Origin: Octopus bimaculoides
Taxonomy: Eukaryota
Assembly (NCBI RefSeq): GCF_001194135.2
Contig: NC_069007.1
Coordinates: 20,614,534 to 20,649,427 of the forward strand
DNA: 34,894 nt
Reading direction: 5' to 3'
Made by a program: the position numbers and the translations under genes. Below are positions 12,176 to 34,894 of the stretch, piece after piece (position 1 is the first letter of the stretch; every line of letters begins with the position of its first letter). The notes beneath the pieces are model-generated. The model did not search any database and was not told where the DNA came from. It was given only the letters and a program-made list of their open reading frames with translations.

Positions 12176-12928
12176 CTTGCGTATTTGGACAGTATATATG
12201 AATTTATACATATATTTGCTCAATATATAGCAAATATTATTTTTAAAAAAAAGGTGATAGTAGACCCGAAAACATGAATANNNNNNNNNNNNNNNNNNNN
12301 NNNNNNNNNNNNNNNNNNNNNNNNNNNNNNNNNNNNNNNNNNNNNNNNNNNNNNNNNNNNNNNNNNNNNNNNNNNNNNNNNNNNNNNNNNNNNNNNNNNN
12401 NNNNNNNNNNNNNNNNNNNNNNNNNNNNNNNNNNNNNNNNNNNNNNNNNNNNNNNNNNNNNNNNNNNNNNNNNNNNNNNNNNNNNNNNNNNNNNNNNNNN
12501 NNNNNNNNNNNNNNNNNNNNNNNNNNNNNNNNNNNNNNNNNNNNNNNNNNNNNNNNNNNNNNNNNNNNNNNNNNNNNNNNNNNNNNNNNNNNNNNNNNNN
12601 NNNNNNNNNNNNNNNNNNNNNNNNNNNNNNNNNNNNNNNNNNNNNNNNNNNNNNNNNNNNNNNNNNNNNNNNNNNNNNNNNNNNNNNNNNNNNNNNNNNN
12701 NNNNNNNNNNNNNNNNNNNNNNNNNNNNNNNNNNNNNNNNNNNNNNNNNNNNNNNNNNNNNNNNNNNNNNNNNNNNNNNNNNNNNNNNNNNNNNNNNNNN
12801 NNNNNNNNNNNNNNNNNNNNNNNNNNNNNNNNNNNNNNNNNNNNNNNNNNNNNNNNNNNNNNNNNNNNNNNNNNNNNNNNNNNNNNNNNNNNNNNNNNNN
12901 NNNNNNNNNNNNNNNNNNNNNNNNNNNN

Positions 12929-12987
<59 letters not shown>

Positions 12988-13734
12988 CATATATATAAAT
13001 ATATATATTTATATATATTATACATATATACGTACATGTATGTATGTATGTATGTATATGAATGTTAGAAACATTATATTAAATGGCGGTATTTTAATTT
13101 TCAGCTCCGTTGACTTGTAAATTAGTGTTTGAAAATTTTGATGGATAATTCATCTCAAACCACCACACCCAGCCCCCTGCTTTGCTCCCTCAAATATAAA
13201 AGAAACCCCTAAAAAAAAAAACTTTAAAAATAGGGAATAGGAAAGCAAAAATCGTGGGACCACCAGTTCCTCATTTGTACGATGTCTCCCCTAGCTCCTT
13301 TGGTAAGCGCTATTAAATGTCTCGGTCCTATTATGTGGGGGCGAAGTCGGAAATTACAGCTAGGTAACTGTGGCTACTCTGCTGGGGTAATTCGGTTCAT
13401 TATTTGTTTGGATATGTGAAAAAAGGTGAATGGAGCGATTATTAAGTGGGAAGGAAAGAAATAGAGCTGGGAGTAAAGTATTATAGTAGATAGGGGGGAG
13501 AATAATGAACGAGTAGGCAGAGGAGGAGGTGGAGTGAAAGAAGTGGAGTGTGTGATCGCTTGACAGAAGATTACATCTTTAGTTTTAAAAAATGACCCTT
13601 TCTCACGTTCCCCCTCTTTATCTATTTATTTCTCTCTTTCTATCTCTCTCTCTCTCCTCCTTCTCCACCTCCTGACTCTCCTTCTTTCGGTTTGTTATAT
13701 CAGAACAGGTTTTTTTTATTGTTCATTTAAACAT

Positions 13735-13890
13735 TAAGAGTGGTAAGTTAACAGAATCGTTCGAGCGTCGGTCAAAATACTTGGCGTCAATTTCTTTTTC
13801 TGGCTCTTGACGTGGTAAGGGTCAACTTTTCCGTGCATTCTTTCTGGGACCAAAAATAGTAGTCAAATAATGAGATCGATATAATCGACT
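13735..13890 (+). mobile_element. SINE family A, old copy with the B-box segment deleted
   Basis: CAGAATCGTTCGAGCGTCGGTCAAAATACTT...GGTCAACTTT...GATCGATATAATCGACT parallels the reverse complement of 7733-7950. Confidence 0.7.
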
Positions 13891-13964
13891 AAACCCGCTA
13901 AAATTAACGGCCTATTGCCAAAAACGGAAACAATTACAAATATACGTATATGTATCTATATATA

Positions 13965-14327
13965 TTTTTTTTTTTTCTTTTTAATGCGTTTCAGCCAAGT
14001 GGCTGCGGTCATGCTGGTGCACCACCGTGATTTTCACGTTCCTTGCATGGCTCTTCTCCCCCACCCGACATGGTCCAATCAAGAGTTTTGATGGCACATC
14101 TGATGTATAAGAGAATTTGACATAGCTGCCCTAAACTGCGTCTCATTACGAGCAATTGGTTCGTCTGGTATCGTGGAGAGGAAAGCGTCAAGTTTTGTCT
14201 TGAAGACCTCCGCATCCATGTCTTGCATGTCTCTCAAATGTTTTCGCAGGGCATTGAAGAGCTGAGGTCCTCTGAAACCGAGGCTGCTGCAGTATCTCGT
14301 TCTTATGTGAGATGCAGTGGACGGTAC
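13965..14327 (-). mobile_element. 3' end of a CR1/L2-group LINE (Daphne/Crack-like): ORF2 C-terminus, 3' UTR and A-rich tail; 5' part lost in an N-gap
   Basis: Open minus-strand frame 14327-14079, followed by ~100 bp UTR with a terminal stem-loop and an A-rich tail (T-run 13965-13982 on +). Clade assignment is from recalled C-terminal motifs, not a search. Confidence 0.8.
14079..14327 (-). pseudogene. LINE ORF2 (reverse transcriptase protein) C-terminal fragment, 82 codons, not in the supplied ORF track
   Basis: Translates without stops as VPSTASHIRTRYCSSLGFRGPQLFNALRKHLRDMQDMDAEVFKTKLDAFLSTIPDEPIARNETQFRAAMSNSLIHQMCHQNS*. The GPxLFNxL...FKxKLDxFLxxIPDxP...RAAxSNSL pattern is typical of CR1/L2-group ORF2 ends. 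Confidence 0.8.
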
Positions 14328-14610
14328 NNNNNNNNNNNNNNNNNNNNNNNNNNNNNNNNNNNNNNNNNNNNNNNNNNNNNNNNNNNNNNNNNNNNNNNNN
14401 NNNNNNNNNNNNNNNNNNNNNNNNNNNNNNNNNNNNNNNNNNNNNNNNNNNNNNNNNNNNNNNNNNNNNNNNNNNNNNNNNNNNNNNNNNNNNNNNNNNN
14501 NNNNNNNNNNNNNNNNNNNNNNNNNNNNNNNNNNNNNNNNNNNNNNNNNNNNNNNNNNNNNNNNNNNNNNNNNNNNNNNNNNNNNNNNNNNNNNNNNNNN
14601 NNNNNNNNNN

Positions 14611-14652
<42 letters not shown>

Positions 14653-14940
14653 GTATTTCTGAATTTTAATGTGTTTGTGCTCGTAAGTGTGTTCTTTTCA
14701 GTTTTTAATTATCTAAATTCTTCCTCAGAGGAAGGAGCTAGTTTCTAACAACGATACAAGGCTCCATCGTTTGAATGTAGATACAAAAATCTATTTTACA
14801 TTATAAATTTGAGTAAAGTCTCGCATATTTTTACTGCTCCACTTACAGATTGTATTTATAATGTGCGAGTTAGTTGGTCGACTTCTTTTTTCTGAAAAGC
14901 CATCCATATGTATGTATGTATGGAAAAATTTCCAACTTAA

Positions 14941-15040
14941 GCCGAACCGCTAAGTTACAGGGACATAAACACACCAACATAGGTTGTCAAGCGATGGTGG
15001 AGGAACAAGCACAGACACACACACACGCACACACACACAC
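14941..15040 (-). mobile_element. Family B SINE, mid-body fragment with internal (CA)n
   Basis: GCCGAACCGCTAAGTTACAGGGACATAAACACACCAACATAGGTTGTCAAGCGATG matches the octopus SINE body as I recall it; no second copy in the window to confirm. Confidence 0.65.
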
Positions 15041-15080
<40 letters not shown>

Positions 15081-15356
15081 GTATGTGCGTGTCCGTGCTT
15101 GTGTGTTGCGTTCACATTAACACAACATCACGAACACATGAATATACCCAAGAATAGATGGATACATTGACAAATGTAATTCGTCCGGATAAATATACAC
15201 ATACACACACACACATACACTCACATATACATTTTGTGACTATGTCTATCCTTCAATCTGTCTGTCTCTCTATCTATCAGTCTATCGATCACTTATTACC
15301 TGTCAGTTTGCCTACCTGTCTTTCTGTCTAGTTACCTAGCTATTGATCTGTGTGCA

Positions 15357-15397
<41 letters not shown>

Positions 15398-15542
15398 TTG
15401 CGTGTGTGTGTCTGTGTGTATGTATGTGCGTTTGCATGTGCGTAAGTTTGTCGGTGCCTGTCTATGCATTCATGGATATGTATGTATGCATGCATGCATG
15501 TATATATGTATGATGTGTCATTCTACTCGTGTATATGCGTGT

Positions 15543-15575
<33 letters not shown>

Positions 15576-15761
15576 CGTGTGTGTGTGTGCGTGTGTAAAT
15601 GTGTATGTTTGTCGGTGCCTGTCTACATACATGGATGTGTGTTTATAAATATAAATATAAGTGTTTGTGTACGGATGTATACATCCACATATGTATGCTT
15701 CTACATATGTATGTATGTATGTATGTATGTATTTATGTCAAATCATGAACAAAACGTATAG

Positions 15762-15807
<46 letters not shown>

Positions 15808-16547
15808 CCTCTCTCTTTCTCCTTGATGCTTTTCAACTCACCAATTTACTCTTGGTTCCGCCAGCCTCCCTCTGAGCAGTTGTCTGCCAATATCGACACG
15901 CCATCTGTATTGACTATATAAACACTGCCGTTGGGTTTTACCGCATCCTACAGGGACTTTAGGTACACAACCAAGGTACTTGATAACCTTGCAGCAGAAC
16001 ATTCCGTTTACTATGTAATCAACAGGCCATCATTGATGCACACGACTTACTAGAAATAGTAGCTAACATCTTCACCAAATCACAAGCTAGAGTTTTTTTT
16101 CTTCTTTTTGTTTTTTTTTNNNNNNNNNNNNNNNNNNNNNNNNNNNNNNNNNNNNNNNNNNNNNNNNNNNNNNNNNNNNNNNNNNNNNNNNNNNNNNNNN
16201 NNNNNNNNNNNNNNNNNNNNNNNNNNNNNNNNNNNNNNNNNNNNNNNNNNNNNNNNNNNNNNNNNNNNNNNNNNNNNNNNNNNNNNNNNNNNNNNNNNNN
16301 NNNNNNNNNNNNNNNNNNNNNNNNNNNNNNNNNNNNNNNNNNNNNNNNNNNNNNNNNNNNNNNNNNNNNNNNNTATATAAGCCTCTATAGAGGGCGGTTA
16401 AACTCAGGGGTTGCCCCAGGCGGTACACAGTCACTTTCTACTCCATTGAATGTGTCTGTAAATAAGAGAAAATGGTGTCGGTTAGAGCACCTATGATCAT
16501 AAGTTTGCTTCACATCGGCTGATATTGGCTGGTCTGGAAGCACAATA

Positions 16548-16889
16548 CGGGGACCCCCTTCGGTCATGACTGACCATGGGATTGCACCTAGGAAGTTACC
16601 CTCCCAGGCACAAGTCCGGGCAAGGTTGCTTTATGGAGGGCCAGCAGTCGCCCAATGCATACCGGCCTCCCCTCTCCACGCCACCAGTGTTATCCAAGGG
16701 AAAAGCAAAGGGGCCGATACAGCTTGGCACTTGTGACGTCGTAACTCATTTCTACAGCTGAGTGAACTGAAGCAACGTGAAATAAAGTGTCTTGCTAAAG
16801 AACACAACACGCTGCCCAGTCCGGGATTCGAACTCACAACCGCACGATCGCAAGCTCGACGCTCTAACCACTGAGCCATGCACCTTCAC
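16548..16889 (-). mobile_element. Full-length tRNA-derived CORE-SINE (family C)
   Basis: Minus strand: A-box TGGCTCAGTGG (16868-16878), B-box GAGTTCGAATCC (16824-16835), CORE-like TGTGTTCTTTAGCAAGACACTT...CACTCAGCTGTAGAAATGAG, terminal hairpin GGTCA-N4-TGACC (16562-16575). Perfect 12-bp TSD GGAAGCACAATA at 16536-16547 and 16890-16901. Confidence 0.92.
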
Positions 16890-16901
16890 GGAAGCACAAT
16901 A

Positions 16902-17030
16902 ACAATAATGGTGATATAGACTGGGTCCACCACCCTGCATAACACCCCTGTTTGGTCGCTGGGTATGCTTGATAGAACTGCAGGTATTCAGGTCAGGTTG
17001 GCTGACCTTGGGCTTAACAGCAACAACAGT
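16902..17030 (+). repeat. Possible older interspersed-repeat 3' end with an (AAC)n-like tail, interrupted by the family C SINE
   Basis: GC-richer than its flanks and ends in CTTAACAGCAACAACAG; resembles repeats I recall from octopus DNA but cannot name. Confidence 0.3.
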
Positions 17031-17265
17031 GGTGGTAGACTTAATCCGTGGCCCTGCTTAACACCCTAATCTGATTCCATGGGTCTGTTTGGCAGTATTG
17101 CAAGCATTCAGAACAGGTCTCCTGTCTAAAGTTAACTCCGTGTGTCTCACCATCCTTGCTATTGCTTAATCCTCCACTAGGTGGCGTCGTGATGTATCAA
17201 GTTCAATAGATCTGTGAATAGCTTTCAATCGATTATGTGACTACGTACCGTGTTGTTGATCTGTT

Positions 17266-17331
17266 TGTTTGCTCCCGTTGTACGGACTGTTTGCTCCCGT
17301 CGTACGGACTGTTTGCTCCCGTCGTACGGAC
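17266..17331. repeat. 22-bp tandem repeat x3 (TGTTTGCTCCCGTCGTACGGAC)
   Basis: Units at 17266, 17288 and 17310; one mismatch in total. Confidence 0.95.
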
Positions 17332-18643
17332 GCTCGCTTTAAATCGAATCTGGAAAAGAAGCATATTTAGGAAGCAATTGCTCTTAAAAAAACAGCATCT
17401 CGAGGGTCAGAATATATATATACTGAATGCATCCGTGCATTTTGAAAAGAATCGCATTAAAAATACAAAATTCAGAAAAGGAGACACGGGGAACGGAAAC
17501 CCCATAGATAGAAGTAACACGTTCAAATGTCCTCCCTCGTGACCGAGTTTGTCTATTTAGGGTTGATCTCCTTAACCACTCAAGGGGAAAAAGAACCGAA
17601 ACGAGTTAATTAATCCTTGCTACATGAAAGACCATATGTTTACCAATCATGCAATAGATGTTCTCTTTTACTAAAGAGATATGTTTGTACACACACAATG
17701 TCAAAAGTCATGATTCTGCAGTGCATTTAACTGAGAAGAGACGTCTAGGTGAGAAGGGCTGTGATGAAATAAGTAGATCAGCAACTTGGCTACGTAATCT
17801 TTGCTTTGATGGACTGAAGAGAGATGTGGGAGTCCCTAACGGCCCTTTCTACGGTTTCTTGCCTGCTCATCATAGAAGATGAACCCTGTTTCTTTTCCCA
17901 TTACACATTAAAAAATCATAGGTTTGTGTTCACATATTTGTAGTTCTCACACAGCCATACTTTCTATAATCCACGTTGAATTTAGTCCATCAGATTTACG
18001 CTGTGTTCTACAGAAAAAATATATTATTTAATTAATGAGAAGCTGTTAAAAAAAAACAAATATGCAAATCACCTATCCTCTACAGTGATAAACTAATTGA
18101 TGACTGTAGTAACTGATTGATCTATCCTATTGACTGGGGGAGTTTGTCCATAAGATTTCTTTGCTTTCTATGCACAGAAAAGGCTTGGAAGGCATGCGCT
18201 TACCTTCTTATATTTCTATTACAGCTAAGCTCTCTAATATTTAAAATTTATGTTAATCCTCTGATTTACGGTTCTTCAACCGACACTCGACTGACCCTCA
18301 AAAACTCGTGTTAGATCTGGAAAAGCAAAAATTCTGTTAAGAACCTAAAGTAATATTTCGAGTGCCTCTGGCACATCTTTAACAAACTTCGTGACAATTC
18401 TGATGTAGTCAAGTCACTTGAATTCTTCCACCATCGTCATAACTGCGCAACCGTTCGCAGACGTTACCAAAGCTCTCATAATAACTGAATACCGGTAAAT
18501 TGAGAGAAGTGTATTTGTACAGTGACTCAGCAAGCTGGTTACCAATAATCGTCAATTCTGTACGTATTTCCGTTGCATATTATAATCATATCACGTGCAG
18601 TCTATCGTGTATGTATGTATGTATGTATGTATGTATGTATGTA

Positions 18644-20213: not shown

Positions 20214-20906
20214 TTTTAAATTGTTACTATATCATATCGTTTGCGTGTGCGCGTGTGTGTGTGTCGCTGAGTTATCCGGTTTATCTAAATTATTCTCTCA
20301 TTAAGCTATTCTTTTTACTTTCTTATGTATTTCTTTTAAAATATTATAATCAGATTGATATTTCGTTAGTATTTCTTGCAAATCAAGTGACCACGCAGCG
20401 ACGCCGCTCCTTCATCGCTTGACTTGTTAATTGGATGGTGAACGGTTCGGTGGTTGTTTCATTGGGTGGCTGGTTCGTGCGGTGGTTGCCTGGGCGAGTG
20501 GGCGAGTGTTTGGAAACCTAGACTCTATGATTCATTACGTCTTTCCATAATTGTAAGATCGTTCACCCCTGCTCCGATTATATCCTTCATAATTATTATA
20601 CCAACGACGAAAAAATTTTGGGAGTAACAATGAGAAGGCGCACCTGAACATAGGAAAGCACATGCAGTATTATAGGTGCGGCTGGTATGTAGGTGGGCGT
20701 TAAATCCTAACATAAGCCCCTAACACATTCACACGCATATACATGCATACATACATACACACACACACATACATGCATACATATACAAACACACACATAC
20801 ACTCATACACACATCCATACAGAGACAACAGCTTCGACACCTCCTGCTTCTATATCCGGATGACAGATCCACACTTATACCACTAATAATTGGAGAACTT
20901 GGTTTT

Positions 20907-22347
20907 GTAAGTAAATGTACGTGCGTGCGTACGTACGTGCATAAATACGTACGTCCGTACGTAGTAAATACCTACGTGCGTACGTCCGTGCGTGCGTACG
21001 TACGTACGTAAATACGTGCGTACGTACGTGCGTATGAACGTGCAAATATACGTGCGTACGTACGTGCATAGTTACGTAGATACGTACGTCGGTACAAACG
21101 TGAATACGTACGTGCGTATTTACGTGTATACATACATCCGTACGTAGTGCATACATACCAGCGACATTACTGCTTACTTACGTCCGTACGTACGTGCGTA
21201 CGTACATGCATACGTACGTGCATACATACGTGCATACATACGTGCATACATACCTCCGTACGTACCGTGCGAACGTAGGAAGGCACGTACGTGAAAGTAC
21301 GTGCTTACCTACGTAAGTGCATAGGTACGTCCATATGCACGTGAGTACGTACGTACGTGCGTACGTACTTCCATACATAGTGCATACGTACGTGCGTACG
21401 AACGTGTCATCCGTACGTGCGTACGAACGTGCATCCGTACGTGCGTACGTTCGTGCATACGTACGTACGTCAATACGTACGTCCATACGTACGTCCATAC
21501 AAACGTCCAAACAAACATGCATACGTATGTCCGTACGTACGTAAAAACGTACGTGCGTACGTACGTGTGTAAGTACGTAAATACGTACGTGCATACGTAC
21601 GAACGTAGGGCTTATGTACGTGCATACGCACGCACGTACGTAGGAACGTACGTATTGCATACATACGTTCGTACGGACGTACGTACTTCGTGCCTACGTA
21701 CGTACTTCCATACGTACGTACACACCTATGTGCGTACGTATGTCCATACGTACGTTCATACATACGTGCGTACGTACGTAGGGCATATGAACGTGCGTAC
21801 GTACGTCCATACGTACGCACGTAAATACGCACGTATGTACGTACGTACGCATATACGTTTATACGTAAATGCATGCGTACGTACGTGCATACGTACGTCC
21901 GTACTTACCTGCGTGCATACGAAGGTGCATACGTACGGCCGTACGTAGTAAAGACGTACGTGCGTACGTACGTAAATACGCACGTGCGTACGTACGTACA
22001 TACGTGCGTACGTACGTATTGCATACGTACGTTCGTACGGACCTACGTACTTCGTGCACACGAACCTGCGTACGTATGCCCATACGTACGTTCATACGTA
22101 CGTGCGTACGTACGTGAATACGTACGTAGAGCATATGTACGTGCGTACGTACGTCCGTACGTGCATACATACGCACGTATGGACGCAGGTACGTAGGAAC
22201 GTCCTTACGAACGTACGTACGAGTATATGTACGTCTATACGTACGCCCGTACGTATAGCATACGTACGGGCGTACGTTCGTGCCTACGTTCGTGCCTACG
22301 TACGTGCATACGTACGTCCGTATGTACCTGCGTACGTACGTGCATAC
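20907..22347. repeat. Complex (TACG)n-based satellite, left (most diverged) block
   Basis: Continuous TACG/CGTA core with recurrent variant words (GTGCGTAC, GTAAATAC, GTCCGTAC, GCATAC, GGGCATATG). Begins abruptly at GTAAGTAAAT (20907) after unique DNA. Confidence 0.95.
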
Positions 22348-23415
22348 TGATGCGACCACCGAAAATACAGTTGGCATTATATCCCTATCTCCCGGGCTGG
22401 GTTTTGAACCCGTACTCTGGTCAGTTGGGGACAATGGTATTTCCTTTGTCTCGTCGGCAACCACAGCTATTTTTAGCGTAGCTGCCCCCTTTCCGGTCAC
22501 CGAAAGTTCAGCAGGACAGGAATTGGCGGGAAGCAGTCGGCCGAAGCAGTGAGCAGAGAATTTTGGCCAGTGGAGTTCTGGCAGCCAGCAGAGGCAGTCG
22601 AGCGGTAGCAGCCAGCCGAGGCAGTTGGGGGACAGCAGTTTGCCCGTGGAGATGGAGCCAGTCGAAGAGAGAAAGTTATGGTCAGCAGAAACGCATAGAG
22701 TCCCAGAGAGAGAGGGACAGAGAGATGAAGCAGTTGTACAGAGATGAAGATGAAGAATTATAAGTCTGACAGAGAGAAAGATATGGTCAGCAGAAATGCA
22801 TAGAGTCCCAGAGAGAGAGAGAGGGACAGAAAGACGGAATTGTAGTGGCAGACTGCCTTGGTCAGTGGAAGTAGCAGACCTGAACGAAACGAACTTCGTT
22901 GTGGTAAATGCTTTTATATTATTTTAAAGAAAAAGAACTCTGAGTTGTTAACTGTGTCGTTGTAAATGCTTCTAAAACAAAGGAAAAGAAAAGGAATACA
23001 AAAGAAAGAAGCAGAAGAACTTTGTTGTCAAATGAAAACTTGAGACACGAATTTGCGATGTAAAAATGATTGAAAAGCTTATAATTGTTTGGAAACTTTG
23101 TGAACGGTATTGAACTGTCATGCCACGTATTGGAATTGTTATTATGTAATGCTCTATTCTAATGTTCTAAATGTATTCTGTGATGTTATGTATGTAAAAT
23201 GAAAAGGTTACCCAACGCATGGTCTTCGTGTTCTTTCTTCCTCCCCTCCTTTTGCCTGTGTTGTTCTTCGTTACGTGCTCCAGCCGGGGCTTTATTATCG
23301 GTCAGGGTGACCGACAGACGAGTTGCTAGCTCACTGAGCGAGTACGAACATTCGCGCGTGCGCGAGCCCCCTATTCGGTGTTAAGGTGGTGCTTCGCGTG
23401 CGGGCGTTCGTAACA
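22348..23415. mobile_element. Solo LTR (probably Ty3/Gypsy) inserted in the satellite
   Basis: 1068 bp of non-satellite sequence starting TGATGCGA and ending TCGTAACA (TG...CA; terminal 8-mers inverted at 6/8). Flanked by 4-bp direct repeat ATAC (22344-22347, 23416-23419). Internal 56/58-bp direct repeat. No PBS, PPT or coding region seen; orientation not resolved. Confidence 0.8.
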
Positions 23416-26400
23416 ATACGTACGTAAGTAGGACATATGTACGTTCGTACGTACGTACGTGCATACGTACGAACATACGTACGCACGTACGTAGGAAAGT
23501 CCGTACATATTGCATACGTACGTTCGTACGGACGTACGTAATTCGTGCATACGTAAGTACAAACGTGCGTACAGACGTACGCACGTGTGTACGGACGGAC
23601 GGACGTGCGTACGGACCGACGTACGTGCTTACGGATGTACGTTCTTACATAAGTACGTCCGTACGTATCAGCGAGCGGACGTGCGTCCGAAAGTGTATGC
23701 GTACGTGAAGATGTACGTGCGTACGTACGTTAATACGTACGTAAATACGTACGTAAATACGTGAGTACGTACGTAAATACGATCGTACGTACGTAAATAC
23801 TTACGTGCGTACGTAAAAACGTACATGCGTACGTACGTAATTCCGTACGAGCGTACGTACGTGCGTGCCAACAAAGGTAAATATGTACGTGCATACGCAC
23901 GTACGTCGGGCATTTGTACGTGCACGCAAACGTCCGTACGTACGTGCACACGAACGTACTGTATACGTACGTCCGTACGTGATGCAAACGTAATTCATGC
24001 ATACGTCCGTACGTACCTGCGTGCGTACGAACGTGCGTACGTACGGAAATACGTACGTGCATGAGTACGAGCATACGTACGTACGTACGGCATATGTACG
24101 TGCGTACGGACGTACGTACGTGCATACGTACATGTATACGTACGTACGTAGGGCATATGTACGTGCGTACGTACGTCCATACGTACGTCCATACGTACGT
24201 GCATACGTACGTACGCACGTACGTAGGAACGTACGTACATATTGCATACGTACGTTCGTACGGAAGTACGTTCGTACGGACGTAGGTTCGTAAGTACGTT
24301 TGTGCAAACGTACGTGCGCATGTACGTTCATATGTACTTCCATACGTACGCACGTACGTTGGAAACTCCGCACGAGTATACTACGTCCGTACGTGTATAC
24401 GTACGTCTGTACGTGTATACGTACGTCCGTACGTGTATACGTACGTCCGTACGTGTATACGTACGTCCGTACGTAAGGCAAACGTACGTTCATGCATACG
24501 TCCGTACGTAACTGCGTGCGTACGTACGTGCATACGTACGTACGACATATATCCGTGCGTACGTACATCCATACGTACGAACGTACGCACGTACGTACGA
24601 ACCTCCGTATGTATTGCATACCTAGGTTCGTACGGACTTACGTAATTCGTGCATACGTTAGCACGTGCGTACGGAAGTACGTACGTGCTTACAGACGTAC
24701 TTTCGTGCATACGTACGTCTGTACGTACCTGCGTCCGGACGTAATACGTCCGTCCGTACATACGTAAAGACGTACGTTCGTACGTACATAAATACGTGCG
24801 TACGTACTTAAATACGTCCGTACGTACGTAAATACCTACGTGCGTACTTAAACACTATGTGCGTACGTAAAAACGTACGTACGTGCGTGCGAACGTACGT
24901 AAATATGTACGTGCATAAGTGTATGCGTACATCCGAACGTACGTACGTAAATACGTAAGTGCGTACGTACGAAAATACGTGAGTACGTACGTAAATTAGT
25001 GCGTGCGTACGTCAAAACGTACGTACGTAAATAGTACGTGCGTACGTACGTAAATAGTACGTGTGTACGAACGTTAATACGTACGTGCGTACGTACGTAA
25101 ATACTTACATGTGTACGTACGTAAACACGTGCGTACGTAAGTAAATACGTACGTAGGTACGTAAATACTTACGTGCGCACGTTTTTACAGACGCACGCAC
25201 GTATTTACGTACGTACGCACGTACGTATTTACTTACGTACGTTCGGATGTACGTACGTACGTACGTTTTTAGGTAAGCACATACGTGTTTACGTACGCTC
25301 GTAGGTATTTACGTACGTACGCACGTACTTAAGTACGGACGCACGTATACACGTTCGGCCGAAGGTACGTACGGACGTACGTATGCACGTATATATGCCC
25401 TACTTACGTACGTATGCACGTACGTACGCACGTAAGTATTTACGTACGTGCGCTCGTATCTACGTGCGCACGCAGGTATTTACGTGTTTACGTACGAATT
25501 TACGTGCATATGCACGTATTTACGTACATAAACACGTATTTAAGTACGCACGCACGTATTTACGTACGCATGCACGTACATATGCCCAACGTACGTACGT
25601 ATGCATGTACATATTTACGTACGTTCGGACGCACGATTTTACGTACGCACGTAAGTATTTACGTACATACGCACGTATTTACGTACGTACGCACGTACTT
25701 ATTTACGTACTTACGAACGTACGTCTTTATGTACGTACGGACGTACGTATACACGATCGGACGCACGTCCGCACGCAGGTACTTACGGACGTACGTATGT
25801 AAGAACGTACTATGCAAGAACGTACGTCCGTACGCACGTACGTAAGCACGTCCGTACGTCCGAACGCATGCACAAACGTCAGTACGCACGTACGAAAGTC
25901 TGCACGCACGTACGAACGTACGTATGCATGAATTACGTACGTCCGTATGAACGTGCGTACGTACGAGCGTGCGTATGCACGTACGTACGTATTTACGTAC
26001 GTACGCACGTACTATTTACGTACGTACGCTCGTACTATTTACGTACGTACGTACGCACATACTATTTACGTACGTACGCACATACTATTTACGTACGTAC
26101 GTTTTTACGGACGAACGTACGTATTTACCTACGTACGCACGCACTAATTTACGTACGTACGCACGTATCTACGAACGAACGCCCGTACGTATTTACTTAC
26201 GTACGTCCGGATGTACGTATACCCGTATGCACGTACATATTTACGTACGTTCGCACGAACGTACGTACGTATGTACGTTTTTACGTACGCACATACGTGT
26301 TTACGTACGCACGTAGGTATTTACGTACGTACGCACGTATTTAAGTACGTACGCACGTATTTACGTACGCACGAACGTAAGTCTTTACGTATGTACCGTC

Positions 26401-29400
26401 GAACGTATACACGTTGGGACGCAGGTACGTACGGACGTACGTATGCACGTACTTATTTATGTAAGTACGTACATACGTATTTACGTACATGCGCACGTAT
26501 TTAAGTACGTACGCACGTATTTACGTACGCATGCACGTACATATGCCCCACGGACGTCCGTATGCACGTAATATTTACGTACGTTCGCACGCACGTTTTT
26601 ACGTACGCACGTAAGTATTTACGTACGTACGCACGTATTTACGTACGTACGAACGTAAGTTCGGACGCACGTCCGCACGCAGGTACGTACTGACGTACGT
26701 ATGTAAGAACGTACGTACGTCCGTACGCACGTACGTACGTCCGTACGCACGTACGTACGTCCGTATGTCCGCAAGCATTTACAAACGTCCGTACACACGT
26801 ACGAATGTCTGTACGCACGTACGTATGCATGAATTACGTACCTCTGTACGAACGTACGGACGTTCCGACGTACGTGCGTACGTAGGTGCGTACGTACGGA
26901 CGTAGGTGCGTACGTACGGACGTACGTATGTACGTACATATGCCCTACTTACGTACGTATGCAAGTATTTATTTACGTAAGTACGCTTTTACGTACGCAC
27001 GTAGGCATTTACGTACGTGCGCATGTATTTGCGTACGTACGCACGTGTTTACGGACGTACGCACGTAAGTATTTACGTACGTACGCACGTACGTATTTAC
27101 GTACGTACGCACGTACTATTTACGTACGCACGCACGTACTATTTACGTACGTACGATTGTACGGACGCACGTACGTATTTACGTACGTATGCACGCACTA
27201 ATTTACGTACGTACGCACGTATTTACGTACGTACGCACGTACGCACGTACTATTCACGTACGTACGAACGTACTATTTACGTACGTACGTTTTTACGGGC
27301 GCACGTACGTATTTACGTACATACGCACGCACTAATTTACGCACGTACGCAGTATTTACGTACGTACGTACGCACGTATTTACGTACGTACGCACGTACG
27401 TATTTACGTACGTTCGCACGTACGTATTTACGTACGTACGCACGAACTATTTGCGTACGTACGTTTTTACGGACGCACGTAGGTATTTACGTACGTACGC
27501 ACGTATTTAGATACGTACGCACGTATTTATGTAAGTACGAACGTACGTCTTTACGTATGTACGGACGCACGTATACACGTTCGGACGCAGGTATGTACGG
27601 GCGTACGTATGGACGTACATATGCCGTAATTACGTACGTATGCACGTACGTAAATACCTACGTGCGTACGTAAGAGTGTACGTAAGTGCGTACGTACGTA
27701 CTTACGTAAAGAAATACGTGAATACATACGTAAGTTGGGCATATGTACGTGCATACGTACGTCCGTACGTGCATACGCACGCTCGAACGTACGCACCTAC
27801 GTACGCACGTACGTAGGGACGTCCGTACGTTCGTACAGACGTGCATGCGAACGTAAGTAAGTATTACGTGCATACGGATGTACGTCGGGCATATGTACGT
27901 GCAAGCGTACGTAAATACGTGCGTGCGCACGTAAATACGTACGTACGCACGTAAATACGTACGTACGCAAATACTTCCGCACGTACGTGCGTACTTACGT
28001 AAATAAGTACGTGCATACGTACGTCCGTACGTACCTGGGTCCGAACGTGTATACGGGCGTCCGTACATACGTAAAGACGTACGTTCGTACGTACGTAAAT
28101 ACGTTTGCACGCACGTTTTTACGTACGCACGTAAGTATTTACGTACGTACGCACGTATTTACGTACGTACGCACGTACTTATTTACGTACTACGAACGTA
28201 CGTCTTTACGTCCGTACGTATAAACGATCGGACGCACGTCCGCACGCAGGTACGTACGGACGTACGTATGCACGATCGAATGTACGTCCGTACGCATGCA
28301 CAAACGTCCGTACGAACGTACGTATGCATGAATTACGTACGTCCGTATGAACGTACGTCCGTATGAACGTACGTACGTGCTACGTAGGTGCGTACGTACG
28401 TTCATACGGACGTACGTAATTCATGCATACGTACGTTCGTACGTACGTGCAGACATTCGTACGCGCGTACGGACGTTTGTGCATGCGTACGGACGTACGT
28501 TCGTGCTTACGGACGTACGTAAATACGTGCGTACGTACTTAAATACGTGTGTATGTACGTAAATACGTGCATACGCAGGTAAATTCGTGCGTACACATTT
28601 AAATACGTTCGTACGCACGTAAATACGAGCGCACGTACGTAAATACGTACGCGCGTACGTACGTGTGTACTTACGTAAATAATTACGTGCATACGTACGT
28701 AAGTCGGGCATATATACGTGCATACGTACGTCCGTACGTACCTGTGTCCGAACGTGTATACGTGCGTTCGTACATACGTAAAGACGTACGTAAATACGTG
28801 CGTACGTACGTAGACACGAACGTGCGTACGTAAACACGTATGTGCGTACGTAAAAACGTACGTACGTACGTACGTGCGAACGTACGTAAATATGTACGAG
28901 CATAAGTGTATACGTACATCCGAACGTATGTAAGTAAATACGTACGTGCGTACGTACGTAAATTAGTGCGTGCGTACGTACGGGCGTCCGTAGAAACGTA
29001 CGTACGTAAATAGTACGTGCGTACGTACGTAAATAGTACGTGCGAACGTACGTAAATAGTACGTGCGTACGTACGTAAATAGTACGTGCGTACGTACGTA
29101 AATACATGCGTACGTACGTAAATACGTACGTGAGTCCGTAAAAACGTACGTAAATAGTACGTGCGTACGTACATAAATAGTACGTATGTACGTACGTAAA
29201 TACGTACGTGCGTACGTACGTAAATACGTACTTGCGTACGTACGTAAATATTTACGTGCGTACGTACGTAAATACTTGCGTACGTACGTAAGTTAGTGCT
29301 TACGGACGTACGTACGTGCGTTCGGACGTATGTACGTTCGTTCATACGTACGTCCGTACGTACCTGCGTGCGGACGTACGTCCGATCGTGCATACGTACG

Positions 29401-32400
29401 TCCGTACGTACGTAAAGACGTACGTTCTTACGTACGTAAATAAGTACGTGCGTACGTACGTAAATACTTACGTGCGTACGTAAAAACGTGCGAGCGAACG
29501 TACGTAAATATGTACAGGCATACGTACTTACGTCGGCCATATGTACATCGGAACGTACGTAAGTAAATACGTACGTGATTACGTACGTAAATACGTGCGT
29601 ACGTACGTAAATACGTACGTGCGTCCGTAAAAACGTACGTACGCACGTACGTAAATACGTACGGTCGTCCTTGAAAACTACGTGCGTACCTACGTAAATA
29701 CTTACGTGCGTACGTACGTAAACACGTGCGTACGTTCCTAAATACGTTCGTACGTACGTAAATATTTACGTGCGTACGTAAGAACGTGTGTGCGAACGTA
29801 CGTAAATATGTACATGCATACGTACGTACGTCACGCATATGTACGTGCATGCGTACGTAAATACGTGCGTACGTACTTAAATATGTGTGTATGTACGTAA
29901 ATACGTGCGTACGCACGTAAATACGTACGTAACTAGGGCATATGTACGTGCATAAGTGTATACGTACATCCGAATGTACGTAAGTAAATACGTACGTGCG
30001 TACGTACGTAAATACGTACGTGCGTACGTACGTAAATATGTGCGTAAGTACGTAAATACATGCGTACGTACGTAAATACGTACGTGAGTCCGTAAAAACG
30101 TACGTAAATAGTACGTGCGTACGTACATAAATAGTACGTACATACGTACGTAAATACGTACTTGCGTACGTACGTAAATATGTGCGTACGTACGTAAATA
30201 CATGGGTACGTACGTAAATACGTACGTGAGTCCGTGAAAACGTACGTAAATAGTACGTGCGTACGTACATAAATAGTACGTATGTACGTACGTAAATACG
30301 TACGTGCGTACGTACGTAAATACGTACGTGCGTACGTACGTAAATACTTACGTGCGTACGTACGTATGTACGTAAATTAGTGCGTGCGTACGTACGTAAA
30401 TACGTACGTGCGTCCGTAAAAACGTACGTACTTAAATAGTACGTGCGTACGNNNNNNNNNNGTACGTGCGTACGTACGTAAATACGTACGTGCGTACGTA
30501 CGTAAATACTTACGTGCGTACGTACGTATGTACGTAAATTAGTGCGTGCGTACGTACGTAAATACGTACGTGCGTCCGTAAAAACGTACGTACTTAAATA
30601 GTACGTGCGTACGTACGTAGATACGTGTGTACGTACGTACGTAAATACGTGCGTACGTACGTGAATTAGTGCGTGCGTACGTACGTAAATACGTACGTGC
30701 GTCCGTATAAACGTAGGTACGTAAATAGTACGTGCGTACGCACATAAATACGTGCGTACGTACGTAAATACGTGCGTGCGTCCATGAAAACGTACGTACG
30801 TAAATAGTACGTGCGTACTTACGTAAATAGTACGTGCGAACGAACGTAAAAACGTACGTGCGTACATACGTAAATACGTGCGTACGTAAATTAGTGCGTG
30901 CGTACGTACGTAAATACGTACGTGCGTCCGTGTAAACGTACGTACGTAAATAGTACGTGCGTACGTACGTAAATACGTACTTGCGTCCGTACGTAAATAC
31001 TTACATGCGTACGTACGCAAATACGTGCGCACGTACGTAAATACCTACGTGCGTACGTAAGAGTGTTCGTACGTGCGTACTTACGTAAATAAATACGTGC
31101 ATACATACGTAAGTTGGGCATATATACGTGCATACGTACGTCCGTACGTGCATACGCACGCTCGTACGTACGCACCTACAAACGTACGTAAACCATGCAT
31201 ATGTACGTACGTACGTGCGTACAGACATTCGTACGTGCGCACGTTTGTACATGCGTAAGGACGACCTTACCGACGGACGTACGTGCGTCTGGACGTACAT
31301 ACGTTCTTGTATACTACGTCCGTGCGTACATGCGTGCGGACGTGCGTCCGATCGTGTCTACGTGCGTTCGTACGTACGTAAATAGGTACGTGCGTACNNN
31401 NNNNNNNNNNNNNNNNNNNNNNNNNNNNNNNNNNNNNNNNNNNNNNNNNNNNNNNNNNNNNNNNNNNNNNNNNNNNNNNNNNNNNNNNNNNNNNNNNNNN
31501 NNNNNNNNNNNNNNNNNNNNNNNNNNNNNNNNNNNNNNNNNNNNNNNNNNNNNNNNNNNNNNNNNNNNNNNNNNNNNNNNNNNNNNNNNNNNNNNNNNNN
31601 NNNNNNNNNNNNNNNNNNNNNNNNNNNNNNNNNNNNNNNNNNNNNNNNNNNNNNNNNNNNNNNNNNNNNNNNNNNNNNNNNNNNNNNNNNNNNNNNNNNN
31701 NNNNNNNNNNNNNNNNNNNNNNNNNNNNNNNNNNNNNNNNNNNNNNNNNNNNNNNNNNNNNNNNNNNNNNNNNNNNNNNNNNNNNNNNNNNNNNNNNNNN
31801 NNNNNNNNNNNNNNNNNNNNNNNNNNNNNNNNNNNNNNNNNNNNNNNNNNNNNNNNNNNNNNNNNNNNNNNNNNNNNNNNNNNNNNNNNNNNNNNNNNNN
31901 NNNNNNNNNNNNNNNNNNNNNNNNNNNNNNNNNNNNNNNNNNNNNNNNNNNNNNNNNNNNNNNNNNNNNNNNNNNNNNNNNNNNNNNNNNNNNNNNAACG
32001 TACGTACGTAAATAGTACGTGCGTACGTACGTAAATAGTCCGCGCGTACGTACGTAAATGCGTACGTGCGTACATACGTAAATACGTGCGTACGTACGTA
32101 CGTATATAGGTGCGTACGTACGTAAATTAGTGCGTGCGTACGTGCGTGCTTACGTACGTAAATATGTACGTGCATACGTTTATACGTACAGGCGAACGTA
32201 CGTAAGTAAATACGTACGTAAGTAAATACATGCGTACGTACGTAAATACATGCGTACGTACGTAAATTAGTGCGTGCGGACGTACGTAAATACGTACGTG
32301 CGTCCGAAAAAACGTACGTAAATAGTACGTGCGTACGTACATAAATAGTACGTACGTGCGTACGTACGTAAATACGTACGTGCGTACATACGTAAATACT

Positions 32401-34894
32401 TACGTGCGTATGTACGTAAATACGTGCGTACGTACTTAAATTAGTGCGTGCGTACGTAAATTAGTGCGTGCGTACGTACGTAAATANNNNNNNNNNGCTT
32501 ACGTACGTAAATACGTGCGTACGTACGTAAATTAGTGCGTGCGTACTTACGTAAATACGTACGTGCGTCCATGAAAACGTACTACGTAAATAGTACGTGC
32601 GTACGTACGTAAATAGTACGTGCGTACGTACGTAAATAGTACGTGCGTACGTACGTAAATACGTACGTGCGTACGTACGTAAATACGTACGTGCGTCCGT
32701 AAAAATGTAGGTACGTAAATAGTACGTGCTTACATACGTAAATACGTGCGTACGTACGTAAATTAGTGCGTGCGTACGTACGTAAATACGTACGTGCGTC
32801 CATGAAAACGTACGTACGTAAATAGTACGTGCGTACGTACGTAAATAGTACGTTCGTAGGTACGTAAATAGTACGTGCGTACGTACGTAAATAGTACGTG
32901 CGTACGTACGTAAATACTTACGTGCGTACGTACGTAAATATGTGCGTACGTACGTAAATACATGCGTACGTACGTAAATTTATGCGTGCGTACGTACGTA
33001 AATACGTACGTGCGTCCGTAAAAACGTAAGTAAATAGTACATGCGTACGTACATAAATAGTACGTATGTACGTACGTAAATACGTACGTAAATACTTACG
33101 TGCGTACGTACGTAAATACGTACGTGCGTTCGTAAGAACGTACGTACTTAAATAGTACGTGCGTACGTACGTAGATACGTGCGTACGTACGTACGTACGT
33201 AAATACGTGCGTACGTACGTACGTAAATACGTGCGTATGTACGTGAATTAGTGCATGCGTACGTACGTAAATTAGTGCGTGCGTACGTAAATTAGTGCGT
33301 GCGTACGTACGTAAATACGTACGTGCGTTCGTAAAAACGTACGTACTTAAGTAGTACGTGCGTACGTACGTGCGTACGTACGTACGTACGTACGTAAATA
33401 CGTGCGTACGTACGTACGTACGTAAATACGTGCGTACGTAAGTGAATTAGTGCGTACGTACGTAAATACGTACGTGCGTCCGTAAAAACGTTGGTACGTA
33501 AATAGTACGTGCGTACGTACGTAAATATGTGCGTACGTACGTAAATACATGCGTACGTNNNNNNNNNNCGTGCGTACGTACGTAAATATGTGCGTACGTA
33601 CGTAAATACATGCGTACGTACGTAAATTAATGCGTGCGTACGTACGTAAATACGTACGTGCGTCCGTAAAAACGTAAATAAATAGAACATGCGTACGTAC
33701 ATAAATATTACGTACGTACGTAAATACGTACGTAAATACTTACGTGCGTACGTACGTAAATACGTACGTGCGTTCGTAAAAACGTACGTACTTAAATAGT
33801 ACGTGCGTACGTACGTAGATACGTGCGTACGTACGTAAATACGAGCGTACGTACGTACGTAAATACGTGCGTACGTACGTGAATTAGTGCGTGCGTACGT
33901 ACGTAAATACGTACGTGCGTCCGTAAAAACGTAGGTACGTAAATAGTACGTGCTTACGTACGTAAATACGTGCGTACGTACGTAAATTAGTGCGTGCGTA
34001 CGTACGTAAATACGTGCGTACGTACGTGAATTAGTGCGTGCGTACGTACGTAAATACGTACGTGCGTCCGTAAAAACGTAGGTACGTAAATAGTACGTGC
34101 TTACGTACGTAAATACGTGCGTACGTACGTAAATTAGTGCGTGCGTACGTACGTAAATACTACGTGCGTCCGTAAAAACGTAAGTACGTAAATAGTACGT
34201 GCGTACGTTTATACGTACAGACGAACGTACGTAAGTAAATACGTACCTGCGTACGTACGTAAATATGTGCGTACGTACGTAAATACATGCGTAAGTACGT
34301 AAATTAGTGCGTGCGGACGTACGTAAATACGTACGTGCGTCCGTAAAAACGTACGTAAATAGAACGTGCGTACGTACATAAATAGTACGTACGTACGTAA
34401 ATACGTACGTGCGTACGTAAATACGTACGTGCGTACATACGTAAATACTTACGTGCGTACGTACGTAAATACGTGCGTACGTAAGTAAATTAGTGCGTGC
34501 GTACGTAAATTAGTGCGAGCGTACGTACGTAAATACGTACGTGCGTTCGTAAAGACGTACGTACTTAAATAGTACGTGCGTACGTACGTACGTACGTGCG
34601 TACATACGTACGTACGTAAATACGTGCGTACGTACGTGAATTAGTGCGTGCGTACATACGTAAATACGTACGTGCGTCCGTAAAAACGTTAGTACGTAAA
34701 TAGGACGTGCGAACGTACGTAAATACGTGCTTACGTACGTAAATATGTGCGTACGTACGTGAATTAGTGCGTGCGTACGTACGTAATGAGTCCATGAAAA
34801 CGTACGTACGTAAATAGTACGTGCGTACTTACGTAAATGGTACGTGCGTACGTACGTAAATACGTACGTGCGTACGTACGTAAATTAGTGCGTC
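23416..34894. repeat. Complex (TACG)n-based satellite, main block with internal inversions (runs off the window end)
   Basis: Same vocabulary as the left block. Polarity words GTAAATAC/GTGCGTAC versus their reverse complements GTATTTAC/GTACGCAC alternate in blocks. Four N-gaps inside. Confidence 0.95.
24381..24474. repeat. 20-bp tandem sub-repeat (GTACGTCCGTACGTGTATAC) x4.7 within the satellite
   Basis: Units start at 24381, 24401, 24421, 24441 and 24461 (partial); two single-base variants. Confidence 0.95.

What the first reader, a model, noticed from the sequence alone, without database searches (positions are those of the whole stretch)
20907..34894. ~14 kb satellite built on a self-complementary, CpG-saturated tetramer (TACG)n
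Seen: the core (TACG)n is its own reverse complement (TACG and CGTA are the same cyclic word), is strictly alternating pyrimidine/purine, and has one CpG per 4 bp; flanking DNA is AT-rich and CpG-poor. Established: self-complementary repeats extrude hairpins/cruciforms, and alternating pyrimidine-purine CpG tracts favour Z-DNA. Inference: this is an unusual heterochromatic (possibly centromeric or subtelomeric) satellite whose transcript would fold into extended dsRNA, notable in a lineage with very high ADAR editing. I do not recognise it as a described family.
Basis: partly seen in the sequence, partly recalled or inferred. Interest (0 to 1): 0.78.

Follow-up and report, generated by a model that had tools for sequence, protein, structure and literature searches.

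The report
Decayed ACGT-based satellite DNA array
This is a real but worn-down, silent stretch of tandemly repeated DNA built from 20-24-base units that derive from the self-complementary word ACGT; it is an unusual motif for an animal satellite, but otherwise ordinary repeat DNA, and part of its layout in the assembly is unreliable.

Summary
The array exists at the stated coordinates: 12,284 read bases between 20907 and the window end. It is interrupted by a 1,075-bp dispersed repeat (22342-23416) and four N gaps.

It is not a pure (TACG)n.
- The longest perfect run is 24 bp, and identity to (TACG)n is 78-81%, against 51-53% in controls.
- The distal half is better described as strand-asymmetric 20-24-bp units (AAATACGTACGTGCGTACGTACGT, about 90% fit).
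- The units lie in blocks of opposite orientation.
- Copies are only about 80% alike, and there is no crisp higher-order repeat.

Exact single-copy unitigs from runs of three separate studies reproduce the locus, so it is not an assembly invention. Three local assembly problems remain:
- Two 10-N gaps hide unmerged contig overlaps of 152 and 51 bp.
- The strand switch near 25170 has no read support.

The family totals roughly 10^5-10^6 bp genome-wide, which makes it a minor satellite. Two RNA-seq runs show essentially no transcripts, so the dsRNA/ADAR idea has no support. Strong single-strand fold-back potential is confirmed in silico (z -4.6 to -9.7). CpGs show no excess decay, which fits unmethylated intergenic DNA.

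Verdict: an apparently undescribed member of a known kind, microsatellite-derived satellite DNA. Interest is low to moderate.

The parts
20907..22341 (+). Proximal block of degenerate TACG-type repeat in + orientation, with a loose repeat period of about 350-370 bp
   Evidence: TRF period 4, 61% matches. 79% match to (TACG)n. Orientation markers 42:7 in favour of +. ATTGCATAC markers at 21654 and 22018. Exact single-copy unitigs 21019-22387 in runs X13 and X7.
22342..23416 (.). Insertion of a dispersed, transcribed interspersed repeat that interrupts the array. It is not part of the satellite. A tRNA B-box-like GGTTCAAAACC lies on the minus strand near 22395.
   Evidence: Only 2-4 occurrences of each TACG-type tetramer, CpG observed/expected 0.87, and 51% fit to (TACG)n. 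DNA read depth is 5-10x that of the array and RNA depth is 15-40. No tRNA, Rfam or Pfam call. No second copy in the window.
23417..25109 (+). Continuation of the + block. It is degenerate with the ~365-bp period up to about 24700, then becomes 20-24-bp AAATA-marked units.
   Evidence: Exact single-copy unitigs 23390-24400 and 24445-24910 in X13 and X7.
25110..25189 (.). Stretch holding the + to - orientation switch. No read or unitig of four runs supports it at 98% identity or better. It is probably a local mis-join or gap-fill.
   Evidence: Zero depth at 25110-25139 and 25170-25189 in X13, X7, X1 and X21. At 85% only paralogous unitigs lie there.
25190..27640 (-). Block of the same 20-24-bp units in inverted orientation
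   Evidence: Marker counts 72 reverse against 6 forward in the bins from 25151 to 27400. Unit hits lie on the - strand from 25202 to 27429. 80-88% identity to + blocks in reverse complement. Exact single-copy unitigs in X13 and X7.
27625..27650 (.). Verified - to + orientation switch (tail-to-tail junction)
   Evidence: It lies inside an exact 133-nt unitig (27539-27671) at single-copy depth in X13, X7, X1 and X2. Sequence shown.
27645..28100 (+). Short + block
   Evidence: GGCATATG markers on + at 27738 and 27888, and a unit hit on + at 28073. A continuous chain of single-copy unitigs 27560-28086 in four runs.
28101..28400 (-). Short - block. Its left junction (GCACGTTTTTAC) resembles the one at 25170.
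   Evidence: Unit hit on - at 28156 and reverse-complement marker at 28307. X7 unitig 28075-28136 spans the switch. Sequence.
28401..31397 (+). Block of 20-24-bp units in + orientation. It holds the 10-N gap 30452-30461, which conceals a 152-bp unmerged overlap.
   Evidence: 30300-30451 is identical to 30462-30613. RNA depth is about 0.
31398..31996 (.). 599-N assembly gap of estimated size. Continuity was not testable.
31997..34894 (+). Most regular part of the array, and it runs off the window end. Units are AAATACGTACGTGCGTACGTACGT (24), AAATACGTGCGTACGTACGT (20), AAATAGTACGTGCGTACGTACGT (23) and AAATTAGTGCGTGCGTACGTACGT (24). It holds the 10-N gaps 32487-96 (no overlap) and 33559-68 (51-bp overlap).
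   Evidence: TRF period 20, 139.6 copies, 71% matches. Unit census. 90% fit to the 24-mer. Best self-match offsets 634-678 bp at 79-86% identity. RNA: 1 read.

Best explanation
This is a non-coding, essentially untranscribed satellite or minisatellite array.

Inferred history: an (ACGT)n microsatellite acquired three substitutions, giving a strand-asymmetric 20-24-bp unit (AAATACGT[ACGT]GCGTACGTACGT). Replication slippage and unequal exchange amplified that unit to more than 12 kb. The array then decayed to about 80% copy identity, suffered internal inversions and took up a transposable-element insertion. It most likely has no sequence-specific cellular function and behaves as neutral repeat DNA.

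Its CpG load persists because CpGs here are not decaying faster than other sites. That is expected if the DNA is unmethylated in the germ line, as reported for intergenic DNA in Octopus bimaculoides.

Its local self-complementarity makes the single strands fold back in many alternative registers. That is a plausible cause of the inversions, of the indel-rich loss of repeat phase and of the assembly breaks.

Shown: anatomy, polarity, reality of the locus, lack of RNA, fold-back energy, absence of CpG-decay excess.
Inferred: origin from (ACGT)n, mode of growth, neutrality, hairpin-driven inversions.
For: - Period 4 with secondary periods 20 and 24; repeat phase is lost at long lags.
- 78-81% match to (TACG)n against 51-53% in controls; the distal part fits the 24-mer at about 90%.
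- Unit census.
- Polarity and inverted blocks. One switch is verified in four runs.
- Copies are about 80% alike at many offsets, with no homogenised higher-order repeat.
- Exact unitigs at single-copy depth from runs of 2015, 2022 and 2025 reproduce the degenerate parts.
- Array words are held at 0.38-0.55 in DNA runs of three labelled studies, plus one run of unrecorded type from a fourth.
- The TE insert has much higher DNA and RNA depth than the array.
- RNA is about 0 in X24 and X31. Most RNA runs hold 0-4% of the words.
- No ORF with a Pfam domain and no RNA family match.
- Fold-back energies: z -4.6, -5.7 and -9.7. The minimum-energy structure has a frequency near 0 and the centroid is nearly open, so there are many registers.
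- CpG transitions 6.0% against non-CpG transitions 7.4% relative to the unit consensus.
Against: - The window ends inside the array, so its true size and chromosomal position are unknown.
- PMC9476566 reports relatively higher methylation in the RepeatMasker 'satellite' class, which could include this family. In that case the lack of CpG decay would need another explanation, such as homogenisation or youth.
- Short contigs of family variants occur at low depth in the 'RNA?' runs of one study, X14 and X15. Low-level or tissue-specific transcription of some copies is therefore not excluded.
- Illumina libraries under-represent hairpin-forming DNA, so abundance may be underestimated.
- Neutrality is a default, not a demonstrated fact.
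Confidence: 0.7

Rival explanations
1. It is a functional heterochromatic satellite (centromeric, pericentromeric or subtelomeric). The window shows the decayed edge of a much larger, homogeneous array that short reads could not assemble.
For: - The array runs off the window end and becomes more regular distally: 24-mer fit rises from 76-78% to 90%.
- Canonical 31-mers have unitig depth 5,000-17,000 against 25-60 for single copy.
- Reads from other loci join TACG units to (AACG)n arrays, so there is a wider CpG-tetranucleotide satellite family.
- Satellites are the one repeat class reported as relatively methylated in O. bimaculoides.
Against: - Estimated family size is only about 10^5-10^6 bp. 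X21 depth is about 10 where about 0.7 is expected for single copy, if the genome is 2-3 Gb. Canonical words occur a few hundred times, and near-pure tracts at a few thousand sites.
- Copies are about 80% alike, without a homogenised higher-order repeat.
- The flank is ordinary AT-rich, microsatellite-rich DNA.
- A TE insert and inversions are typical of non-homogenised arrays.
Confidence: 0.12
2. It is a transcribed source of long double-stranded RNA, serving as an ADAR substrate or as an siRNA/piRNA precursor.
For: - Predicted RNA fold of -166 kcal/mol per 300 nt, z -9.7.
- Inverted blocks would give long-range duplexes.
- Low-depth contigs appear in the 'RNA?' runs X14 and X15.
Against: - Raw RNA-seq runs X24 and X31 give 1 read each on 2.4-2.9 kb, and 44 partial reads on 4.6 kb, while the embedded TE is well covered.
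- Eleven other RNA runs hold 0-4% of the words.
- No A>G excess could be assessed because there are no reads.
- The type of X14 and X15 is only guessed, and they also hold 34-38% of the words of the non-genic flank, which suggests DNA carry-over.
Confidence: 0.05
3. It is an assembly product with no real counterpart.
For: - There are unmerged overlaps at two 10-N gaps.
- The interval 25110-25189 is unsupported.
- Raw reads show many alternative joints in the distal part.
- The scaffold is short-read based and has 13 N runs.
Against: - Exact unitigs (0 differences, 60-550 nt, single-copy depth) from runs of three separate studies tile the degenerate parts, including an orientation switch.
- Array words are present in DNA runs of three labelled studies.
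Confidence: 0.03
4. It is a binding platform or sink for ACGT-core DNA-binding proteins, such as bZIP factors or bHLH-PAS factors that recognise TACGTG.
For: TACGTG occurs 227 times and TACGTA 741 times in 12.3 kb, against 2 and 12 in 17.9 kb of flank. That these are factor-binding cores is general knowledge, not tested here.
Against: The motif counts follow automatically from the repeat unit. There is no conservation, chromatin or expression evidence, and no gene lies within the window.
Confidence: 0.04

Closest known systems
Microsatellite-derived simple satellites and minisatellites (for example Drosophila simple satellites, or hermit-crab (TAGG)n-type satellites)
   Same: A short motif is amplified head-to-tail into kb-scale arrays. 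A longer unit (20-24 bp) is built from a mutated oligomer of the motif. Loose higher-order periods are present, and so are internal inversions and TE insertions.
   Different: The founding motif ACGT/TACG is self-complementary and contains CpG. To my knowledge it is among the rarest tetranucleotide repeats in animals. Abundance is low, and copies are strongly diverged (about 80%).
Alternating purine-pyrimidine Z-DNA-prone tracts ((CG)n, (CA)n; the G+C-rich land-crab satellite with such tracts)
   Same: There is local strict pyrimidine/purine alternation with CpG steps. 59-65% of bases lie in alternating runs of 12 bp or more.
   Different: Runs are interrupted every 20-24 bp by AAATA. TpA steps make the Z form less favourable than in (CG)n (general knowledge). 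No experimental evidence exists here, and the flank's (AT)n and (CA)n runs are longer.
Cruciform- or hairpin-forming palindromic repeats (AT-rich palindromes such as PATRRs, or (TA)n fragile sites)
   Same: Each strand is self-complementary. Predicted fold-back is far stronger than in shuffles. The sequence is associated with rearrangement (inversions) and assembly breaks.
   Different: There is no single long perfect palindrome. Perfect self-complementary runs reach only 24 bp, and many competing registers exist instead of one cruciform.
(AACG)n/(CGTT)n arrays of the same genome
   Same: They share a CpG-containing tetranucleotide base. In reads from other loci they directly adjoin TACG-type units.
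   Different: (AACG)n is not self-complementary, and no run of three or more AACG units occurs in this window.

Membership tests
Satellite / minisatellite DNA | Head-to-tail tandem repetition of a definable monomer | tested here: met
   TRF periods 4 and 20. Unit census of 20-, 23- and 24-mers. 90% fit of the distal part to the 24-mer. 40 unit matches against 0 expected.
Satellite / minisatellite DNA | Array length in the kb range or more | tested here: met
   12,284 read bases. The array runs off the window end.
Satellite / minisatellite DNA | The family is present at many copies or loci in the genome | tested here: met
   Canonical words have unitig depth 5,000-17,000 against 25-60 for single copy. 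72-87% of raw DNA reads fit only partly and continue into other sequence.
Pure (TACG)n microsatellite | Long perfect or near-perfect repetition of the 4-bp motif | tested here: not met
   The longest perfect run is 24 bp, identity to (TACG)n is 78-81%, and there is about 1 indel per 100 bp.
Centromeric satellite | Among the most abundant tandem repeats, in large homogenised (higher-order) arrays | tested here: not met
   The rough family size is 10^5-10^6 bp. Copies are about 80% alike at many offsets. Abundance may be biased low by Illumina chemistry.
Centromeric satellite | CENP-A association or cytological position at the primary constriction | not testable with these tools
   No chromosome coordinates, FISH or ChIP data are available.
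Heterochromatic, methylated satellite | CpG methylation or H3K9me3 over the array | tested here: inconclusive
   Indirect only. CpG transitions show no excess (6.0% against 7.4%), which argues against long-term germ-line methylation. The literature reports relatively higher methylation of an unspecified 'satellite' class. No bisulfite run was identified.
dsRNA / ADAR-substrate locus | The locus is transcribed | tested here: not met
   1 read each in X24 and X31 over the distal array. Most RNA runs hold 0-4% of the words.
dsRNA / ADAR-substrate locus | The transcript would form an extended duplex | tested here: met
   In silico only: -166 kcal/mol per 300 nt, z -9.7.
Z-DNA / cruciform-forming tract | Uninterrupted alternating pyrimidine/purine or perfect inverted repeat of sufficient length; structure formed in vivo | tested here: inconclusive
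   Alternating runs reach 69 bp, but mostly stay under 20 bp. ssDNA fold z is -4.6 to -5.7. Formation in vivo is not testable.
Protein-coding repeat (YVRT-type ORFs) | Expressed ORF with homologues or domains | tested here: not met
   ORFs up to 534 aa exist only because TAC-GTA-CGT-ACG has no stop codon. There is no RNA and no exact gene on record. Database hits are other microsatellite-encoded ORFs.

The most novel reading that the evidence does not exclude
The TACG-unit arrays, together with the neighbouring (AACG)n arrays, form a lineage-specific class of CpG-tetranucleotide satellites that short reads badly under-assemble. On this reading they are the methylated 'satellite' fraction reported for octopus. 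They would mark specific chromosomal domains (centromere-proximal or chromosome ends) and adopt non-B DNA, slipped hairpins or Z-form, which drives local inversions and fragility.
Probability: 0.08. Interest if true: 0.6.

Novelty: new member of a known kind. Interest (0 to 1): 0.27.

Why it matters
If the plain reading is right, the finding matters mainly in two practical ways.
- It documents an apparently undescribed repeat family with a rare, self-complementary, CpG-bearing motif.
- It flags mis-assembled spots in this scaffold: two unmerged overlaps and one unsupported junction.

It also gives a small natural test case. A CpG-saturated array that shows no CpG-decay excess fits the reported lack of intergenic methylation in octopus.

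Only if the family proved to be large, methylated and positioned at centromeres or chromosome ends would it bear on cephalopod chromosome biology.

Tried and rejected
- No PacBio run is listed for this organism, so array length could not be checked with long reads.
- Literature: seven searches and four papers read found no cephalopod TACG/ACGT satellite. One search was rejected for syntax, another for term length, and the 2015 genome paper is not held.
- An exact scan of metagenome contigs for the 29-nt unit found 0 hits.
- tRNA and Rfam scans found nothing above threshold. Two weak mir-297 hits at 22300-22358 are far below the gathering score (30 against 90 bits) and are treated as chance.
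- A Pfam scan of nine flank and insert ORFs found 0 families.
- I looked up window ORFs in public assemblies to learn the organism and find paralogous arrays. Nothing is on record.
- A protein-level search with a repeat-encoded ORF returned mostly (ATAC)n-type and a few (TACG/TATG)n-type microsatellite ORFs on unrelated ENA contigs, with no homologous array.
- A crisp higher-order repeat was looked for and rejected. There are only loose periods of about 350-370 bp (proximal) and about 634-678 bp (distal) at 73-86% identity.
- The attempt to resolve the 25170 junction at 85% likeness was swamped by paralogues. An alternative left flank seen in unitigs is absent from the window and may be paralogous.
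- A target-site duplication for the insert could not be defined inside repeat DNA.


Full report
**1. What is in the sequence**

From about 20907 to the last base of the window (34894) the sequence is dominated by the words TACG, ACGT, CGTA and GTAC. Each occurs 110-150 times in 20907-22341, 635-831 times in 23417-31397 and 256-342 times in 31997-34894. In the 17.9 kb of read flank each occurs 43-55 times. TRF reports period-4 arrays over the same three stretches, and for 31999-34878 a better period of 20 with consensus CGTACGTACGTAAATACGTG.

A wraparound alignment to an endless (TACG)n matches 78-81% of bases in every segment, with about one indel per 100 bp. The same procedure gives 51-53% for shuffles, three flank pieces and the internal insert.

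**2. It is not a pure (TACG)n**

- The longest perfect run is 24 bp, and only 38-46% of bases sit in perfect runs of 8 bp or more.
- CpG density is 1 per 6.2 bp, and CpG observed/expected is 2.6-3.6.
- The flank has GC 0.36 and CpG observed/expected 0.85. It is AT-rich but not CpG-depleted for its composition.
- Strict pyrimidine/purine alternation reaches 69 bp at most. The flank's (AT)n and (CA)n tracts are longer.
- Autocorrelation shows period 4 (0.59-0.65), secondary peaks at 20 and 24, and complete loss of phase at long lags.

**3. The true unit and its polarity**

Splitting the distal half at its A-rich marker gives units of 24, 20 and 23 bp:
- AAATACGTACGTGCGTACGTACGT
- AAATACGTGCGTACGTACGT
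- AAATAGTACGTGCGTACGTACGT
- AAATTAGTGCGTGCGTACGTACGT

The 24-mer fits the distal 2.4 kb at about 90%, while the proximal part fits it no better than (TACG)n. The 20-mer differs from (ACGT)5 at three positions, which is the basis for inferring a microsatellite origin.

These units are not self-complementary, so the array has polarity. Strand-specific markers and unit matches show this layout:
- plus orientation to about 25100
- minus from about 25200 to 27640
- plus 27645-28100
- minus 28100-28400
- plus from there to the end

Reverse-complement alignments between the blocks run at 80-88% identity. Direct copies are also only about 80% alike at many offsets. There are only loose periodicities, about 350-370 bp proximally and about 634-678 bp distally. 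This is an old, poorly homogenised array.

**4. The interruption**

The stretch 22342-23416 is not satellite. It fits (TACG)n at 51% and has CpG observed/expected 0.87. Its read depth is several-fold higher than the array in genomic reads, and it is well covered in RNA-seq. It is therefore a dispersed, transcribed interspersed repeat that inserted into the array. No tRNA, Rfam or Pfam assignment could be made.

**5. The gaps (the scan program's question)**

- The 152 bases before the gap at 30452-30461 are identical to the 152 bases after it.
- The 51 bases before 33559-33568 are identical to the 51 after it.

Other copies within the array are at most 88% alike, so these are unmerged contig overlaps. 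The sequence is continuous there and the assembly overstates the length by 223 bp. The gap at 32487-32496 and the 599-N gap at 31398-31996 show no overlap. Continuity across them is unknown, although the same unit type and orientation lie on both sides.

**6. Is the locus real?**

Yes. All listed runs carry one coded species label.
- DNA runs of three labelled studies (2015, 2022, 2025), plus one run of unrecorded type from a fourth, hold 38-55% of the array's sampled 31-mers and over 90% of the flank's.
- Unitigs from X13 (2015), X7 (2022), and X1 and X2 (2025) match degenerate parts of the array exactly. They are 60-550 nt long with no differences, at the depth of single-copy DNA (about 25-60).
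- The minus-to-plus switch at 27625-27650 lies inside such a unitig in all four runs, so inverted blocks are a genuine feature.
- In contrast, 25110-25139 and 25170-25189, which contain the first plus-to-minus switch, have zero support at 98% or better in four runs. At 85% only paralogues lie there. That junction is unverified and probably a local assembly error.

**7. Abundance**

- Canonical pieces have summed unitig depth of 5,000-17,000, which means a few hundred copies.
- A near-pure (GTAC)n piece collects 2-5 x 10^5 at 85% likeness, which means a few thousand sites.
- Raw genomic reads (about 1.9 Gb sampled) give a mean depth of about 10 over the array, and 72-87% of them fit only partly.

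With an assumed genome of 2-3 Gb (my assumption, since the species is coded), this points to 10^5-10^6 bp for the family, a minor satellite. The caveat is that hairpin-forming DNA is under-represented in Illumina data. Reads from other loci often run from TACG units straight into (AACG)n/(CGTT)n arrays. No such run occurs in this window.

**8. Transcription**

In two true RNA-seq runs the distal array received one read each, and 24400-29000 received 44 partial reads. The embedded repeat at 22390-23230 had depth 15-40 in the same data. Eleven other RNA runs hold 0-4% of the array's words. Only one study's runs of guessed type hold 8-23%, and those also hold a third of the words of the non-genic flank, which suggests DNA carry-over. 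No editing analysis is possible without reads, so the dsRNA/ADAR proposal has no support at present.

**9. Physical properties**

Folding 300-nt pieces gave these results:

| Piece | Molecule | Energy (kcal/mol) | z against dinucleotide shuffles |
|---|---|---|---|
| distal | DNA | -90 | -5.7 |
| proximal | DNA | -82 | -4.6 |
| distal | RNA | -166 | -9.7 |

The best structure has a negligible ensemble frequency and the centroid is almost unpaired. The strand can therefore pair with itself in very many registers rather than forming one cruciform. Whether hairpins, cruciforms or Z-DNA form in vivo is untested.

I infer that slipped and fold-back intermediates explain the many indels, the inversions and the assembly trouble. 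This is inference only.

**10. CpG persistence**

Relative to the 24-mer consensus, transitions at CpG positions (6.0%) are no more frequent than at other positions (7.4%). A germ-line-methylated array should show a large excess. [quoted passage not shown] The same paper notes relatively higher methylation of an unspecified 'satellite' class, so direct methylation data are needed. G-to-A changes are about three times as frequent as C-to-T, and I cannot explain this.

**11. Coding and context**

Long ORFs in the array, up to 534 aa, arise only because TAC-GTA-CGT-ACG lacks stop codons. No such gene is on record. Database 'homologues' are other microsatellite-encoded ORFs. The 20.9-kb flank is AT-rich, full of microsatellites and N gaps, and has no Pfam-detectable gene.

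**12. Comparison, novelty and verdict**

The object meets the definition of satellite or minisatellite DNA. It fails the tests for a pure microsatellite, for a transcribed dsRNA locus and, as far as could be tested, for a major centromeric satellite. I found no published description within the searchable library, but Repbase and Dfam could not be queried.

I file it as a new member of a known kind. The motif is unusual and the behaviour is ordinary. Interest is 0.27.

The most novel reading still open has a probability of about 0.08. It holds that the TACG and AACG arrays form a larger, under-assembled, methylated, position-specific satellite class.

Noticed in passing
window 22342-23416: A 1,075-bp dispersed repeat sits inside the satellite. 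Its genomic read depth is 5-10x that of the array, it is clearly present in RNA-seq (depth 15-40), and it has internal 27-bp and roughly 85-bp duplications. A tRNA B-box-like GGTTCAAAACC lies on the minus strand near 22395, but no tRNA or Rfam call was made. It is probably a SINE-like head plus other TE fragments.
   Followed up: partly
window 30300-30613 and 33508-33619: Exact 152-bp and 51-bp duplicates flank the 10-N gaps at 30452 and 33559. The contigs overlap and were not merged, so the scaffold is about 223 bp too long here.
   Followed up: yes
window 25110-25189: The reference sequence around the first strand switch has no exact support in four read sets, including a 2015 run. It is a likely local mis-join or gap-fill. 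The junction motif GCACGTTTTTAC recurs at the verified-looking switch near 28100.
   Followed up: partly
other genomic loci seen through read overhangs: Reads that match TACG units often continue into (GAAC)n/(CGTT)n, that is (AACG)n arrays. This second CpG-containing tetranucleotide satellite adjoins TACG-type arrays elsewhere in this genome but is absent from the window.
   Followed up: partly
window 25200-34894 (units aligned to the 24-mer): Strand-asymmetric substitution pattern relative to the unit: G-to-A at CpG is about 3 times C-to-T, while overall CpG transitions are not in excess. This is unexplained, and amplification of variant units may contribute.
   Followed up: no
window 29428-31032 (minus strand) and many others in 20875-33702: Spurious long ORFs (up to 534 aa, YVRT-type) arise because the repeat lacks stop codons in some frames. 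Gene predictors could mis-call them.
   Followed up: yes
window 17266-17331: Three near-perfect copies of a 22-bp unit, TGTTTGCTCCCGTCGTACGGAC (97% matches), sit in otherwise unique flank.
   Followed up: no
window 7861-7945 and 9991-10076: A short dispersed repeat, two direct copies at 81% identity. A tRNA-like 'GLNLEP/GLGFEP' reading also appears near 11875-12108, suggesting SINE fragments in the flank.
   Followed up: no
window 16400-18600: Small 'RNA?' runs of one study hold 27-38% of the words of this non-genic flank. Either the flank is transcribed (TE or lncRNA) or these libraries carry genomic DNA.
   Followed up: no
window 1-20906: Nine N gaps sit almost all next to (AT)n, (TG)n or (AG)n microsatellites, and several have short repeat overlaps across the gap (30-36 bp of AT). 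The whole scaffold is a short-read assembly that breaks at simple repeats.
   Followed up: partly
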